Shown one piece after another: positions 1 through 6,076 of a stretch of 64,000 nucleotides of DNA. Below the pieces are notes generated by a model. It saw only the letters and a list, made by a program, of their open reading frames with translations. It had not been told where the DNA came from and ran no database searches. The stretch is taken from positions 38,316,001 to 38,380,000 of the forward strand of contig NC_135763.1 in assembly GCF_052425735.1 (NCBI RefSeq). The letters run 5' to 3'. This stretch comes from Oculina patagonica (taxonomy: Eukaryota). Within the stretch, counting starts at the first letter, position 1. Every line of letters begins with the position of its first letter. The position numbers and the translations under genes were made by a program.

Positions 1-26
1 AAAATAATCAACATCTTGACAATTAC

Positions 27-180
27 CTTCTGACATTAGCAGTTTAATTTAGTTAACATCGTAAGAGACCTGCAATTAGTCCTCTTTCCAGCACATGCTA
101 CAGGGGATTATAAGAGGAACACCTAAACAAGGGAGTGACAGCTTTGCTAAACTATGTTCCAGGAGAAGAGCAAACTTCTG
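27..180 (-). other. Probable exon of a minus-strand gene running off the left edge (mostly 5'UTR, possible ATG at 36-34)
   Basis: Minus strand reads ttttcctattttccag|CAGAAG...CTA ATG TCA GAA G|gtaatt: a good acceptor and donor, ending in phase 1. A further donor (gaa|gtaagt, ~750) suggests an upstream non-coding exon. Confidence 0.4.
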
Positions 181-240
181 CTGGAAAATAGGAAAATTAA
201 AACATTTACCAGGGAACTAGACTTTTGATATCATACAATA

Positions 241-416
241 CAGTTAACTCTCACCATAACAGACACCTTAGCGACCACAATTTGGTGCCCGCAATAGAGA
301 AAGTCCGTAGTTGTGGGAGTTATTTTTAGTAATTCTTATTCACCGGGACTTCAACTCCTGTCTGTATTAACAGGGTGTCCGTGATAACAAGGTGTCTGCA
401 AGGTGGGAGTTGACTG
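241..416. mobile_element. Tc1/mariner-pogo-type MITE (CAGTYAACTCTC...GAGTTGACTG, TA TSD)
   Basis: TA|CAGTTAACTCTC ... GGGAGTTGACTG|TA. Related copies at 39654-39820, 41315-41472 and 58076-58249. Confidence 0.8.
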
Positions 417-860
417 TACTAAATAGAATCAAAGTGCCCGTTGGGCTGTCTCGTGTTTCAGATCAGTAAAGTAGCACCCGTTGCTAACAATCATATAAGC
501 TCAGAAAAAACATCTCCGGATTCTACAATATTAATTCTCAAATTTCATTCTCAAGCATTTGCAACAGCCTGTGCTATACGAGCATCGCACCATGTGCCCT
601 TTCTACACATTCTACTCAAATAGTCAAACCAAGACTGCCCTTCCAAAAACTCAACAAAATCTTCGCAATGATTTCTAAGGTATTCAACAACTACAAAACG
701 CACTATCTAAAACGCACTACGATTTGCTACTTTCATACTTAATTACTTACTTCCCTATTCGCCATCGGCGCTCAGGGCAGCAAATGACTTGCTACCGAGT
801 CAAATATCTGATGACTAACACTTCGAAAAACGAAAACAGTCTCCATTTCCACCACAATCA

Positions 861-1046
861 TAGACTGCAGCTAGTCGTATCTTTTGCGAACGCATGTAAC
901 GCACTCGGTCTTTGTATAACAGGCCCGTAGGGAGGGGGTGCGATGGGTGCGTTCGCACCCCCCCCCCCCCCACGAGCCTTGGAAGTCCGCTCATTGTGAA
1001 AAAAAAAATATATATATATATATATTAAAATAAATAAATAAATGAA

Positions 1047-1081
<35 letters not shown>

Positions 1082-1880
1082 AGGGAAATGGTATTTCTGT
1101 ACTTCGACTATTTACATTCAATATGGTCCTTTGGGTTGAAGATCCACCATTTGAAGATTCGTGTGGTATATTTTAGACCAAATTGTGTGATTATAGGTTA
1201 AATTCAACGATACATTCTACCTAATGTCCTTCATAGTCGAACCATTCGAAGTGCCATTCCCAGGCGCTACCAAAAGAGAGGAGACTGGGTACTTGTTGGG
1301 CTCGGAAACACCCAAGGACAATACTAAAAGATCAACAAACCGACTCTGACTGATTTATGTAATAACCATTTTGACACTAAAATGAAGAGACCTATCTTTT
1401 TCCTGTTTTCCTTCTATGTGCTGCTGTCATTTTTAGCTAAATAAATTGTAAACTACGTTTTTGAGGTTCTGTTTCGAAAAATGTGATTTGAATTTAAAAA
1501 TGTACTAGAATTATTGTCGTCGTTTTCTTCACTTTTACCTGCCTTTTCTCCTAACAAACTGTCTTCAAAACGCACGAAATGCCTATTTTTTCAAAATTTC
1601 CTGGGAGAGGATACCCCCAGACCCCTCCCCCCTACATTAACGCGCCTGCGGCGCTCAAGATTTCGTGCCACAGTCGCTCATACGCACCTCCCATGAAAAA
1701 TCCTGGTTACGGGCCTGTATAATATCTTAGTACGACAGCGAGAGGTCTGGCGCCAATGTAAAACTGTGAGTGGGACTGGGGAGAGACGCTAAAAGTTTTT
1801 TCTCGCCTCGCAGGCTCACAACGTTCGGCGCATTGCGCCTTTCAACGACTTAAGAGAACAAACGACTGTTTTGCAGTCTA
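861..1880. mobile_element. Non-autonomous TIR element with TAG termini and 9-bp TSD (AcademH-like), carrying a nested insertion
   Basis: TSD CCACAATCA at 852-860 and 1881-1889; termini TAGACTGCA...TGCAGTCTA. Confidence 0.8.
920..1717. mobile_element. Nested non-autonomous DNA transposon, CAGGCCCGTA TIR, 5-bp TSD
   Basis: TATAA|CAGGCCCGTA ... TACGGGCCTG|TATAA; contains a (TAAA)n microsatellite at ~1027-1082. Confidence 0.8.
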
Positions 1881-2429
1881 CCACAATCACAAGGAACAAG
1901 ACCAACTGCACGTAACCTATTTCTAAGTTGTGAAAACGAAGTACAATCATAACATTCCCTGTTATTCACCGTCATGTTTTCACCGAAATTAACAATAGGC
2001 CATACGACCAGGAATCTTTCCAATACACCACACATAAATAACATTTTATAATATACAGAAAATTTTTTATCATAACTAAATTTCCAAAACCTATATGCAT
2101 TATTCCAGAATGAAGAAAATATAAAACTTCTATATTTTCCCCCTTCCCATCACCCACCACTCGCGCTTCGCGCTCGCTCAAAATCCCTGCCTCTTTCCAA
2201 AACTCTCCAAAATCCGCGCGGCCTTGGAAAAGCCTGTGAAGGAGGCAGACGCATTCTGATTAGGTTAGAATGGGTCATCTTTCATCAGCCCCTTGAAATT
2301 GCCTGGATGGGGGAAGGGATATGGGACGGAGATAATGTAATCTCTGGTTTTTCTTTCTACGTCATCTGCCACTTGACATTAATTGCTCAGATAAGGCAGG
2401 AATGATGGCGAAGAGGGATTTTAACTACA

Positions 2430-2801
2430 TACGTAATACGCATTTTGCATGGGTCTAACTCGATAATGAATCCTCACTTAGACAACAAAACAAAATAGAA
2501 CCGGGCAATAAGAAATGACTAGTACAAGATATAAACGAAAGAGACAAGTTATATTTTACGAGTTTTTAGTATTAGAAAGAAAACAGACATTTGCTTAGAT
2601 GATATCGGGAACAGGAATTTTGTTTACCTTAGCGTAATACGCATTTTTTCATTTTGTATGAACCATTTAACTCAACAAGAAATCCTCTCTTAGACCACAG
2701 AGCAAACTAGAACCAGACAATTAGAAAGGGCTTGTACAAGATATAAGTTAAAGAGACAAGTTATATTTTATGCGGTTTAGTGTAAGAAAGGAAACAGACA
2801 T
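2430..2801. repeat. Diverged ~200-bp direct duplication
   Basis: CGTAATACGCATTTT...GTACAAGATATAA...AAAGAGACAAGTTATATTTTA...AAACAGACAT occurs twice (~2432-2590 and ~2634-2801). Confidence 0.7.
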
Positions 2802-3902
2802 CAAAGCGGTGTAAATAAGCAAGCAGCCTTTGACCTTACTGGCGGCAAAGTATCGTATTCGTATATCGGTTGTCACGCAAAAAAGGAAATAACGCTACTA
2901 GGCACGTCTATAAAGCCACAGGGCTTCTTGTTTGTGTCTTTCTTTAATACTGCGACGAGTTGACCTTTAGCATGTGTCTTAGTGAATGGGGGAATTCAGG
3001 GAATTTTGAACTGTTTTCCAAAATGGTTTAGTGTAATACTCGAATTGAACACACGCAAGGAAAAAAATGTCCAAGGGATCTACAAGTTGTTTTTTAACTA
3101 GTTTAATCAGCGCAAATTTCAACTTGCACCAGCTAGTAAAGGCACACATCTGGTTCGACTATTACGGTCTATTACATCTTTGAAATCCGAATCTAAAAGA
3201 TTGGAACGACAAAAAAAGTTTTTTTTTTTCTGACATATTGTCGACATACCTACAGTTCTGTATTATTCTGTAAGGAGCAATCCTGTTTAAGAACAAAGCC
3301 GAAGATGAGATACCACATCAATATTTCTGTTTGCGTGATAACTTCACTTAATATTCTCCTTTTGACACATTATTTGACATATCTGAAAACTGCTCTGACG
3401 TCAACAACCCTTTACCCTAACACGCGCCAAAATGGTTTTCTTGTAACGCAAACAGAAATTTGACAACAGCTTTATCTTCTAATTCATACTTTAACAATAC
3501 CCACCGCAAATATAATATCAAAACACAAACCTACCGTAAAGATAAATTCATTTTCCATGTAAAAAACTACCTATTTAAGCAACATATGTGAGATAAAATC
3601 TCCTTATCAGATTTGGCGGTATTACTAAAGATAGTACTTCATGTAATATATTACATTATACACATACCTCATAATGCAAACATTTACACTATATGTCTCA
3701 CACGCGTAAATAAGCACTTTAAAACTCGACAAGAGAAAACGCGCAATACGAAGAACAGCATCCCGGTGCATCTTATCAGCAAAATGTATCTATGTAAATA
3801 TGGCTATTTCTTACCTTGTTTCCTTGCTACTTTATCACTTCGTTACCTTACGAGAGGTCTTACACAAAGCACTATTGTGAGCTACCAAGTCTACTCGGAT
3901 AA

Positions 3903-3958
3903 TCTCGTGTTACGTCACGGTCACGTCGTTCACGACGTGACCGCGACGTAACACGAGA
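3903..3958. repeat. Near-perfect CpG-rich palindrome (27-bp arms, 2-nt loop)
   Basis: TCTCGTGTTACGTCACGGTCACGTCGT-TC-ACGACGTGACCGCGACGTAACACGAGA, one mismatch between arms. Confidence 0.9.
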
Positions 3959-5215
3959 CAAAAAGTACTCATTTGAGATTTCAAAGATAAAACCAGAATA
4001 ATGCTCCGGATTTTCAGGATGGTCTTCACCCTAACCCTGACACCCCCAACTAAATTTAAAAATAATATGCAATTAGCCCTGTTAATACTATCTTGAATAA
4101 ACCCAAACCCAACAGACCGAGAATATTCTCTCACATAATTTAACATGATACAGTTCAAGCAAATGTCCCTGACTGATGGTAATCATTGTTCTTTGTTATT
4201 GTTGTATTGTTTCTGTCTCCAAGCATTGTGCATATTTTACATGATGACGTTGATACACAAATTTCATCACAAGCTGTGATTTTCCTTGAAAGAAACATTG
4301 CATTTCTAAGGCAAAATCAATGGAATTCTGTGTGAAATGTACTGGTATAAAATAATTCCATGTGCTTTTAAAAACCTGTTTCTACATGCAGCTTACGAAT
4401 TCAAATATTCCAAAAAATAAAACTATACCAGACTTCTAGACTAACCACTTTAAAAAAAAAACAAGTAGAAAAGCAAATATATATGCACGTAATTTGACAG
4501 TTTGGGAAGTTATTATTTTTCTATTTCAGAAGCCTCAAAATCACACCAGGGGGTTGAACAGAACAGCTGCAAATTTTCAAGTAAAAAAATAATTTGGAAT
4601 CGCTACTGGATAAAATATAAGTATCCATTAACTTATTAAAGCTCTGATAAAGTGTAAAGTTAAAATCAAATATATGATTTTTATTATTTATAATCACTGT
4701 TAATATTTAGTGGAACATTCTAGAACGTATGAGTAATTCTCTTGGTGTGTGAAGCAAATGTTGTGTTTGGTTATCAAAAGTCTCTGCAACCATTAAATCT
4801 AAAGGTTTTCAAATTAAGCTCTCAAGTTTCTAATTAAAAGTAGTTACATTATATGTCTTTTAAAGTATCTACACTGGGAAAGGAAAACTATAAAATTCCA
4901 TCGATCAAAACTGTTCAAAATTATTAGAATTCTTTTTAATGACAAATTAATAAGAAAGATGTTTAAATTATTTAACGATATTCACATCAGGCTATGATGC
5001 TTCTTGGAACCATCAAAACCTTAAGTTAAAATGAGAGTGAACAGAACGTTGAAGATAGTTCAGTAAAGTTTCAATTAAGGTATTCACTCATCGGAAAGTT
5101 TAGAAACAAACTTTTACCCAACAACAGCATCACTTGGCATCATCACGAAATATCATCTACTAAATTAAACCGTCATGTGAGATTTTTCTTAATTACATTA
5201 TGATAAAAAATATAC

Positions 5216-5441
5216 CTGGTCTTCCTAAACTATGTAAGTCAGTGCATCTGTCAGCAGCTAGAACTGTGTCATTGATGGAAGTTTCAGAGCAAGTTTGAAA
5301 CAGCCCTTCGTGATGATATTGTACACCTTGGATTTCTTTATCTTCTTTCCACCAAACTCGCCAAAAGTCAGTGGAAAGTGCCAAAATTCCCAGTAGAATT
5401 GCCGCTAAACAGCTTACAAAGCTTGTTATTACTTTGATCAT
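5216..5441 (-). CDS. Claudin/PMP22/EMP-superfamily first coding exon (TM1 + extracellular loop 1), proximal variant
   Basis: MIKVITSF...ALSTDFW...EGLFQTC...C fits the claudin W-GLW-C-C signature (GLF variant). Donor CCAG|GTATAT after 226 nt (phase 1). Confidence 0.8.
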
Positions 5442-5853
5442 CGTGTTTTAGCTGCTTTCGTGTTCTCAAAGTTTCGCTTTACTGCTGCGTCGCTGGGTGT
5501 GTCGATTAATTTGTAAGGAATTTGCTGCCAACTGCTTCATTGAAATGCATGCCTTCCATTTATGCTCGCTTCACTTCACTCATAACAATGTTTTACGTAT
5601 GATTTTAAAACTTACAGCGCAATGCTTCATTAGCTACAGTGACCACGAAATCCTTACAGATAATTTAACAGAATTCGAGTGAAATAAAACGTCAGATATG
5701 ATCGCTTTTTACTTTTCTACTGTGTCAATGTGATGCAGAAAAGTAACGTTGCTCTAAATAAACGGCGCACTGACATCTCCGCAGTAGGCCAAGGAATATC
5801 ACGCCTATTTTACAAAAATATCTTGTCCAAACGATACAAAATAAACTACTTGC

Positions 5854-6076
5854 CTACTCCTACGTCCAGATAGTCGCCATCACAGTCTTCTTTTATCAGC
5901 TCGTCTGTAATGTTGTCTCTGGCTTCGTAGCAGTGATAGAACAGTCCCCGGTAGTGTGTGACATTTTGATTGTCAGAAATTATAACCCATTGCAGCCAGT
6001 ACGTCGTGGCCAGGCTCAAAATGATCATCAGCATTGCTGCAAAAGAGCAGACAATGGCTGTGATAACTTTGATCAT
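5854..6076 (-). CDS. Claudin/PMP22/EMP-superfamily first coding exon (TM1 + extracellular loop 1), distal variant
   Basis: MIKVITAI...SLATTYW...RGLFYHC...C; likely GC-type donor GTAG|GCAAGT after 223 nt (phase 1). Confidence 0.8.

What the first reader, a model, noticed from the sequence alone, without database searches (positions are those of the whole stretch)
5216..6076. Tandem 'variable' first exons encoding alternative claudin-like extracellular loop 1 (protocadherin/UGT1-like variable-constant design)
Seen: two paralogous exons ~410 bp apart, each with its own ATG (MIKVIT...), TM1 and a strongly diverged ECL1, both ending at the same position in phase 1 (one GT, one GC donor). I found no TM2-TM4 exons between them or in the 5 kb downstream. 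Known: claudin ECL1 sets paracellular ion selectivity and partner recognition. Inference: promoter choice swaps ECL1 onto shared constant exons lying beyond the window, diversifying junction or recognition specificity, which could matter for septate-junction ion flux in a calcifier.
Basis: partly seen in the sequence, partly recalled or inferred. Interest (0 to 1): 0.75.

Follow-up and report, generated by a model that had tools for sequence, protein, structure and literature searches.

The report
Two-start claudin-like gene in coral
One small four-pass membrane gene of the coral Oculina patagonica has two duplicated start exons that RNA shows are each spliced to the same downstream exons, a design kept since before corals and sea anemones split and already listed as isoforms X1/X2 in relatives, so it is real but a known kind of thing.

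Summary
Two minus-strand paralogous first coding exons lie 412 nt apart: 1a at 6076-5854 and 1b at 5441-5216. They are 39% identical, and each encodes the ATG, TM1 and the whole first extracellular loop. Both end in phase 1, 1a with a GC donor and 1b with a GT donor.

The genome holds a single set of downstream exons. Exon 2's acceptor lies 3 nt left of the window.

RNA contigs show both junctions:
- 1a to exon 2 in three runs from three studies.
- 1b to exon 2 in two runs.
- Neither junction in a DNA run.

The same layout is present in Nematostella, Acropora and three other cnidarian assemblies. First exons group by type rather than by species, and both types are under purifying selection (dN/dS 0.08-0.25).

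So the "shared constant exons" reading is supported, with limits:
- There are only two variable exons, so this is not a protocadherin/UGT1-like array. Vertebrate CLDN10a/b is the closest analogue.
- The protein belongs to the PMP22/claudin/TARP superfamily (RefSeq: "claudin domain-containing protein 2-like") and is not a classical claudin.
- Both loops are acidic, and non-calcifying anemones carry the same pair of exons, so the ion-selectivity and calcification idea has no support.

RefSeq already lists isoforms X1/X2 in relatives. The 1a isoform is missing from the Oculina annotation.

The parts
5854..6076 (-). Alternative first coding exon 1a: ATG at 6076-6074, TM1, the four-strand ECL1 and a GC donor. 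The intron starts at 5853. Its 5'UTR extends to the right by an unknown length.
   Evidence: ORF and sequence. A GC..AG joint from window 5854 to exon 2 is seen in runs X1, X2 and X4 and not in DNA run X15. Orthologues exist in Nematostella, Acropora and three other assemblies. dN/dS is 0.08-0.23.
5442..5853 (-). 412-nt spacer. It is the start of the intron for 1a transcripts and the presumed promoter and 5'UTR for 1b transcripts.
   Evidence: The spacer is 412-550 nt in six genomes. In RNA runs X1 and X2 it lies on the same contig as exon 1b and the 1b-exon 2 junction (table 8, records 7 and 23).
5475..5634 (-). Conserved non-coding block just upstream of exon 1b, with a TATA-like ATAAAT at 5563-5558. 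This is the candidate 1b promoter.
   Evidence: Mean pairwise identity among four stony-coral genomes is 65-83% here against 32-37% in mid-spacer. Coding dS between the same genomes is about 0.7-2.4, near or beyond saturation.
5216..5441 (-). Alternative first coding exon 1b: ATG at 5441-5439, TM1, ECL1 and a GT donor. The intron starts at 5215. This is the first exon of the annotated protein ACROYT_G023953.
   Evidence: ORF. Spliced to exons 2 and 3 it equals P0026 exactly. A GT..AG joint from window 5216 to exon 2 is seen in runs X1 and X2. dN/dS is 0.09-0.25.
1..5215 (-). Intron between exon 1b and exon 2. The acceptor 'cag' and exon 2 (G000:C6:38315857-38315997) lie 1-144 nt left of window base 1. 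Exon 3, with the stop codon, is at C6:38314144-38314286.
   Evidence: Own-genome searches, the sequence, exon coordinates and the joints.
427..3959 (.). 3.5-kb high-copy repeat insertion inside the intron. It is present in the reference and absent from other alleles.
   Evidence: A joint from L012 497 to 4031 (skipping 3,533 nt) is seen in X1, X2 and the DNA run X15. Depth inside the segment reaches thousands, against about 20 for single-copy DNA. Haplotig C310 starts exactly at window 427.

Best explanation
This is one gene of Oculina patagonica, annotated as ACROYT_G023953 and named 'claudin domain-containing protein 2-like' by RefSeq in related species. It has two tandemly duplicated, mutually exclusive first coding exons.

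Each first exon carries its own start codon, TM1 and the complete first extracellular loop (four beta-strands with the W...GLF...C...C motif). Each is spliced in phase 1 to the same exon 2 (TM2, and TM3 in part) and exon 3 (the rest of TM3, TM4 and the stop).

The products are two four-pass membrane proteins of 168 and 169 aa. They are identical from residue 75 (1a isoform) or 76 (1b isoform) onward and about 40% identical before that. So the cell can change the outward-facing sheet and TM1 while keeping the rest of the bundle.

Shown here: both junctions, the single constant set, conservation of the layout and purifying selection on both exons.

Inferred:
- Exon 1b is driven by its own promoter in the conserved 160-nt block of the spacer.
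- The two isoforms differ in extracellular partner recognition or glycosylation. Exon 1a has two conserved N-glycosylation sequons and 1b has one. They do not differ in charge-based ion selectivity.

The duplication predates the split between sea anemones and stony corals.
For: A single set of constant exons. The only other copy, C310, is a 98% identical haplotig.

Junctions in RNA: 1a to exon 2 (GC-AG) in X1, X2 and X4; 1b to exon 2 (GT-AG) in X1 and X2; neither in DNA run X15.

The 1b isoform equals the deposited protein P0026.

Same four-exon layout in Nematostella, Acropora and three ENA assemblies.

Nematostella RefSeq X1 (b type) and X2 (a type) share an identical C-terminal part.

cDNA contigs L010 and L011 of another coral share 1,084 identical 3' nucleotides starting exactly at the phase-1 junction. 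Their 5'UTRs are unrelated to each other, and each is colinear with the genome right up to its own ATG.

The first-exon tree separates a and b types, each containing both anemone and coral sequences (90/86 support).

dN/dS is 0.08-0.25 for both exons.

The fold is TM1, four beta-strands, then TM2-TM4, with the exon boundary just before TM2.

A conserved block with a TATA-like box lies upstream of 1b.
Against: All RNA evidence comes from assembled contigs, so no transcription start is mapped.

The 1b-junction contig in X1 and X2 runs unbroken from 30 nt inside exon 1a through the whole spacer. Some or all 1b-containing RNA could therefore start at the 1a promoter. Such RNA would first meet the 1a ATG and a stop right after the unused GC donor.

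The third RNA run, X4, shows no 1b junction.

The runs carry coded organism labels and differ from the reference by up to about 2%, so some are from other individuals or close relatives.

dS is near or beyond saturation, so the dN/dS ratios are rough.

No protein-level or localisation data exist.
Confidence: 0.85

Rival explanations
1. There is one promoter only. All transcripts start upstream of exon 1a, and exon 1b appears only when the weak GC donor of 1a is skipped and the next donor, that of 1b, is used. These RNAs carry the 1a ATG followed by a stop codon 4 nt into the retained spacer, so they would be non-productive or regulatory, and the 1b protein would be made little or not at all.
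For: The 1b-junction contigs in X1 and X2 are continuous from exon 1a through the spacer (records 7 and 23). The 1a donor is a GC donor in Oculina. GC donors are generally weaker than GT donors (my own knowledge).
Against: Exon 1b has kept an intact ORF, its own ATG, a phase-1 donor and dN/dS of 0.09-0.25 in anemones and corals, which a non-coding by-product would not. Acropora and L015 have ordinary GT donors at 1a and still keep 1b. The b-type cDNA contig of another coral ends 62 nt upstream of its ATG, without exon 1a. A conserved block with a TATA-like box lies upstream of 1b. The unique intron downstream of 1b is almost uncovered in X2 (0-12, against 221 for the spacer-plus-1b contig), so unspliced precursor RNA does not explain that contig.
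Confidence: 0.1
2. These are two separate tandem genes. Each first exon would have its own TM2-TM4 exons, or one of the two would be an orphan remnant of a decayed duplicate.
For: Before testing, only the window was available and no downstream exons were visible. The GenBank annotation of this genome lists only the 1b form.
Against: The genome has a single exon 2/3 set, 5.2 kb downstream of both first exons. Both exons are joined to that same exon 2 in RNA. Both are conserved under purifying selection in six genomes.
Confidence: 0.02
3. This is a true claudin isoform switch of the CLDN10 kind. The two ECL1 versions would give septate junctions different ion selectivity, which would matter for calcifying epithelia.
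For: The gene design matches CLDN10a/b, where exon 1a or 1b changes TM1 and ECL1 (PMC6862131). The protein has the claudin-type fold.
Against: Both ECL1 versions are net acidic in all twelve sequences examined (-1 to -8), so there is no charge reversal. The protein ends two residues after TM4, with no cytoplasmic tail or PDZ-binding motif. By sequence it is nearer to TARP gamma-2 and MP20 than to claudins. The same two exons occur in non-calcifying anemones. No localisation data exist.
Confidence: 0.1

Closest known systems
Vertebrate CLDN10 (claudin-10a / claudin-10b). CLDN18 (lung and stomach isoforms) is a similar case, from my own knowledge.
   Same: The gene has two alternative first exons, each encoding TM1 and most or all of the first extracellular segment, joined to shared downstream exons. 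The result is two four-pass proteins with identical remainders (PMC6862131). The fold class is also the same.
   Different: Claudin-10a and -10b have oppositely charged ECL1 and opposite ion selectivity. Here both loops are acidic. The coral protein has no C-terminal tail and is not a classical claudin. The two designs probably arose independently: the coral pair matches vertebrate CLDND2 only weakly (27-29% identity). Here the two exons are only about 410-550 nt apart.
Clustered protocadherin and UGT1A variable-constant loci
   Same: Tandem first exons, each with its own start codon, are spliced to common constant exons.
   Different: Those loci have many variable exons, each with its own promoter (my own knowledge). 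Here there are exactly two, in six genomes. A separate promoter for 1b is inferred and has not been mapped.
Mammalian CLDND2 (claudin domain-containing protein 2), the name RefSeq transfers to this gene
   Same: A small protein matching PF00822. It is the only named non-cnidarian sequence hit (E 5e-7, 27-29% identity).
   Different: The similarity is too weak to establish orthology. Whether CLDND2 uses alternative first exons was not examined here.
TARP / calcium-channel gamma subunits and lens MP20
   Same: These are the best solved-structure matches by sequence (E 2.6e-8 and 1.9e-6) and they tie with claudins by fold (TM-score 0.65-0.72).
   Different: The long cytoplasmic C-terminal tail of TARPs is absent. 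There is no evidence of any association with a channel.
Other duplicated alternative first exons noted by this scan in the same genome (for example riboflavin kinase, s1-313573)
   Same: The same gene-structure pattern: two duplicated first coding exons joined to one exon 2, conserved in corals and anemones according to that note.
   Different: An unrelated protein. I did not re-test that note.

Membership tests
PMP22/EMP/MP20/claudin superfamily (Pfam PF00822, PF13903) | Whole-protein score above Pfam's gathering cut-off | tested here: met
   For P0026 (Oculina 1b isoform), PF00822 scores 39.3 bits against a cut-off of 26.7 and PF13903 scores 36.7 against 29.1. For the Acropora a-type protein P0030 the scores are 42.6 and 40.2. 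The first exons alone fall below the cut-offs.
PMP22/EMP/MP20/claudin superfamily | Four-helix bundle with a beta-sheet formed by ECL1 (four strands) and ECL2 | tested here: met
   AlphaFold models of the b and a isoforms have pLDDT about 80 and pTM 0.72-0.75. The b-isoform model (P0026) gives H2-23, four strands at 28-68, H78-104, H112-137 and H145-167. The a-type model (P0030, 172 aa) has the same order of elements. Foldseek gives TM-scores of 0.65-0.72 to claudin-3/4/15/19 and to TARPs.
Classical claudins (strand-forming tight-junction claudins) | ECL1 signature W-GLW-C-C, with the two cysteines about 8-10 residues apart (my own knowledge of the family) | tested here: inconclusive
   Both exons have W27, G-L-F (not GLW) and two cysteines. 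The cysteines are 15-21 positions apart (alignments).
Classical claudins | Cytoplasmic C-terminal tail ending in a PDZ-binding motif (my own knowledge) | tested here: not met
   The protein ends ...IMADR, two residues after TM4, in all 14 aligned homologues.
Classical claudins | Localisation to, and formation of, junctional strands or paracellular pores | not testable with these tools
   No localisation or physiology data are available. No paper on this gene in cnidarians was found.
CLDN10-type isoform switch | Two alternative first exons encoding TM1 and ECL1 joined to shared exons | tested here: met
   RNA joints from both donors to one acceptor. The exon boundary lies just before TM2. The CLDN10 description comes from PMC6862131.
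CLDN10-type isoform switch | Opposite net charge of the two ECL1 versions | tested here: not met
   In Oculina the net charge is -8 for 1a and -5 for 1b. All twelve ECL1 sequences examined are net negative.
Variable-constant clustered loci (protocadherin, UGT1A) | An array of many tandem variable first exons | tested here: not met
   There are only two first exons in the whole genome and in the 144 kb around the locus. There are also two in each of five other genomes.
Variable-constant clustered loci | Each variable exon has its own promoter | tested here: inconclusive
   In favour: a conserved block with a TATA-like box upstream of 1b and separate 5'UTRs in cDNA contigs, each colinear with the genome. 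Against: contigs cannot show transcript starts, and the spacer is contiguous with exon 1a in RNA contigs.
CLDND2 orthologue | Orthology to mammalian CLDND2 (reciprocal best match, shared gene structure) | not tested
   Only a one-way weak match was seen: 27-29% identity, E 5e-7.

The most novel reading that the evidence does not exclude
The two isoforms could be an ancient binary recognition code, more than 500 million years old and specific to hexacorals. The same tail-less four-pass scaffold would display one of two extracellular sheets that differ in surface and glycosylation. These sheets would select different partners in trans or in cis. Possible partners are different septate-junction types, or, given the TARP-like sequence affinity, different channel or receptor partners in different cell types. 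This would be an independent origin of the claudin-10-type isoform switch outside bilaterians.
Probability: 0.12. Interest if true: 0.6.

Novelty: new member of a known kind. Interest (0 to 1): 0.35.

Why it matters
This is a cleanly documented case of swapping a protein module by choice of first exon. It has been held for the whole history of sea anemones and stony corals, in a membrane-protein superfamily where the same trick is known to change function in vertebrates (claudin-10 and claudin-18).

In practice, the 1a isoform is missing from the deposited Oculina patagonica annotation, yet it gave the deeper junction contigs in every RNA run examined. Expression studies that count only the annotated model would therefore miss or misassign most of this gene's output.

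The finding says nothing yet about calcification or ion transport.

Tried and rejected
- The Pfam family search of the whole genome found nothing at this locus because single exons score too low. The downstream exons were found only after a library-wide profile search gave full-length homologues.
- Most library hits to the first exons are short ORFs that read through into the intron on genomic contigs. They are gene-calling artefacts and not short proteins.
- P0019, a 1,310-aa protein with nine matching stretches, is an unrelated repeat protein that shares only a short YxGxFYxC-like motif. I set it aside.
- Exact-sequence look-ups for the Nematostella X2 and Porites lutea proteins found no record. 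The Nematostella locus was reached through X1 instead.
- The bacterial-type promoter and terminator scan does not apply to an animal genome and was ignored.
- Alternative GT donors at the end of exon 1a, 4 and 10 nt upstream of the GC donor, are not the ones used. The joint falls at the GC donor.
- Literature searches for this gene in cnidarians returned nothing. The search for claudin-18 first exons returned only unrelated papers, so the claudin-18 comparison rests on my own knowledge.
- The transcription starts could not be determined because only assembled contigs were available.

Full report
**What is in the sequence**

The finding lies on the minus strand. Two ORFs start with the same six residues (MIKVIT). 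One runs from window 6076 down to 5854 (exon 1a) and the other from 5441 down to 5216 (exon 1b). They are 39% identical over 75 residues (E 2e-11).

Each ends after the first base of a codon, directly before a splice-donor-like site: G|GCAAGT for 1a and G|GTATAT for 1b. The spacer between them is 412 nt.

On their own the two peptides give only sub-threshold matches to the PMP22/claudin Pfam families.

**Where the rest of the gene is**

The window is G000:C6:38316001-38380000.

A profile of the two exons searched against 1.8 billion representative proteins gave 24 hits. Most are short ORFs reading through into the intron. Two are full-length four-pass proteins of 169 and 173 aa.

I searched the C-terminal 96 residues of one of them against the whole genome. 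It found one exon 2 (C6:38315857-38315997) and one exon 3 (C6:38314144-38314286, ending in a stop codon), both on the minus strand. The acceptor 'cag' of exon 2 occupies the three bases immediately left of window base 1.

Exon 2 begins with the last two bases of a codon, which matches the phase-1 ends of both first exons.

The only other copy of exon 2 is on a 5.85-kb unplaced contig, C310. It is 98% identical to this same locus, so it is a haplotig and not a second gene.

A relaxed tblastn over 80 kb to the left plus the whole window found no third first exon and no second constant set. A whole-genome search with exon 1b found only 1a and 1b.

Exon 1b spliced to exons 2 and 3 reproduces exactly the deposited protein ACROYT_G023953 of Oculina patagonica. 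This also identifies the genome. The 1a form is not among the deposited proteins that the searches returned.

**Are both exons used?**

I laid contigs of four public runs on a 6-kb stretch running from exon 2 to the end of exon 1a.

| Run | Type | 1a to exon 2 joint (GC..AG) | 1b to exon 2 joint (GT..AG) |
|---|---|---|---|
| X1 | RNA-like | yes (contig depth 62) | yes (contig depth 16) |
| X2 | RNA-like | yes (1,095) | yes (221) |
| X4 | RNA-like | yes (145) | not seen |
| X15 | DNA (flat depth about 20 over the unique parts) | no | no |

The 1a joint links the last base of exon 1a (window 5854) to the first base of exon 2. The 1b joint links window 5216 to the same exon 2 base. X1, X2 and X4 come from three different studies.

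In X1 and X2 the exons are at least ten times deeper than the unique intron, so these runs behave as RNA. X15 serves as a DNA control.

The tool warns that contig depths cannot rank expression. I report only that both junctions exist and that the 1a junction was found in more runs.

One caveat matters. The contig carrying the 1b junction runs unbroken from 30 nt inside exon 1a through the whole spacer. Contigs therefore cannot tell whether 1b RNA starts in the spacer or at the 1a promoter.

**Conservation**

RefSeq calls the gene 'claudin domain-containing protein 2(-like)' and numbers isoforms X1 and X2 in six species: Porites lutea, Orbicella faveolata, Acropora digitifera, Exaiptasia diaphana, Actinia tenebrosa and Nematostella vectensis.

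The two Nematostella isoforms were both retrieved. One has a b-type and the other an a-type N-terminal half, and they are identical from the exon 2 junction onward.

I mapped the exons on genomic loci:

- The order 1a, spacer, 1b, intron, exon 2, intron, exon 3 holds in Nematostella, in Acropora digitifera and in three further cnidarian assemblies.
- The spacer is always about 410-550 nt.

In a further coral, two transcript-like contigs (a type and b type) share 1,084 identical nucleotides. The shared part begins exactly at the phase-1 junction, and their 5'UTRs are unrelated to each other. Each UTR is colinear with the genome right up to its own ATG. Neither transcript therefore uses a shared upstream leader exon.

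A maximum-likelihood tree of first-exon peptides separates an a clade from a b clade. Each clade contains both anemone and stony-coral sequences (support 90/86 on 76 columns). Orthologous 1a exons of Oculina and Nematostella are 64% identical, whereas 1a and 1b within one species are 38-44% identical. The duplication therefore predates the split between anemones and stony corals.

Between stony corals, dN/dS is 0.08-0.23 for 1a, 0.09-0.25 for 1b and 0.09-0.13 for the constant part. dS is near or beyond saturation, so these ratios are rough. Both exons are kept as coding sequence, and there is no sign of diversifying selection.

**A second promoter?**

Alignment of the spacer from four stony corals shows a conserved block at window 5634-5475. 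Mean pairwise identity there is 65-83%, against 32-37% in the middle of the spacer. The block contains a TATA-like ATAAAT about 120 nt upstream of the 1b ATG.

Four lines together make an independent 1b promoter likely:

- this conserved block;
- the separate, genome-colinear UTRs;
- the almost uncovered intron downstream of 1b in X2, which argues against unspliced precursor RNA as the source of the spacer signal;
- the fact that read-through RNA from the 1a promoter would meet the 1a ATG and then a stop codon 4 nt into the spacer.

I put this at about 0.7. It has not been shown.

**What kind of protein it is**

The full-length proteins pass the Pfam cut-offs for PF00822 and PF13903.

AlphaFold models of a b-type and an a-type protein (pLDDT about 80) give TM1, four extracellular beta-strands, a short helix, TM2, TM3 and TM4; the b-type model also has a short strand before TM4. 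The exon 1/exon 2 boundary falls just before TM2. The swapped module is therefore exactly TM1 plus the whole ECL1.

Foldseek matches claudins and TARPs equally well (TM-score 0.65-0.72).

By sequence, the best solved relatives are TARP gamma-2 (E 2.6e-8) and lens MP20 (1.9e-6), ahead of claudin-4 (1e-4). Mammalian CLDND2 matches at 27-29% identity.

The protein ends two residues after TM4 and so lacks the cytoplasmic tail of classical claudins and of TARPs. I file it as a member of the PMP22/claudin/TARP superfamily and not as a classical claudin.

**Function**

ECL1 is net acidic in both isoforms in all twelve sequences examined (-1 to -8), so there is no charge reversal.

The conserved differences between the two versions are:

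- two N-glycosylation sequons in 1a against one in 1b;
- a different strand surface;
- a different TM1.

The closest known design is vertebrate CLDN10, where exon 1a or 1b changes TM1 and ECL1 and reverses charge selectivity (PMC6862131). Claudin-18 is similar, from my own knowledge.

The coral gene works like these at the level of gene architecture. The evidence does not support a selectivity switch. A link to calcification is unlikely, because non-calcifying anemones keep the same pair of exons.

My best inference is that the isoforms present different extracellular recognition or glycan surfaces in different cells or stages.

'Protocadherin/UGT1-like' overstates the case. There are two variable exons, not an array, in all six genomes examined.

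The design itself (duplicated, mutually exclusive first coding exons) is a known kind. RefSeq already models the isoforms in related species. Other notes of this scan report the same pattern for unrelated genes of this genome (not re-tested here).

I found no paper describing this gene in cnidarians.

I rate it a new member of a known kind, of moderate interest. The observation and the structural part of the interpretation are confirmed, and the physiological part is unsupported.

Noticed in passing
window 427-3959: A 3.5-kb segment of the intron consists of high-copy repeats: depth in the thousands in a DNA run whose single-copy depth is about 20. Contigs of two RNA runs and of the DNA run skip it precisely. 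It is therefore a polymorphic insertion, present in the reference haplotype and absent from other alleles. A minus-strand ORF at 551-703 looks OTU-protease-like by eye; I did not test this.
   Followed up: partly
L018 (G000:C310:1-5851), matching window 427 down to 1,270 nt left of the window: This unplaced 5.85-kb contig is a 98% identical haplotig of the locus. It begins exactly at the repeat-insertion boundary. Its copy of exon 2 has an in-frame TGA (DWN*AT...) and other changes near the exon's end. This is either a low-quality contig or a null allele.
   Followed up: partly
window 5852-5853 (donor of exon 1a): The 1a intron is a GC-AG intron in Oculina and in assembly L016. Acropora and L015 have GT at the same place, so the GC donor is a change specific to this lineage.
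   Followed up: partly
window 5854-6076 plus exons left of the window: The deposited Oculina patagonica annotation (ACROYT_G023953) contains only the 1b isoform. The 1a isoform was joined to exon 2 in all three RNA runs but is not annotated.
   Followed up: yes
L013 23158-23612 and L014 1-2815: A gene like EML (echinoderm microtubule-associated protein; HELP and WD40 domains) is a neighbour of this gene in both Nematostella and Acropora digitifera, which suggests old microsynteny. I did not check this in Oculina.
   Followed up: no
G000:C4:62195900-62196055: This is a distant paralogue of the constant part (38% identity over 50 aa), presumably another gene of the PMP22/claudin superfamily. Its exon structure was not examined.
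   Followed up: no
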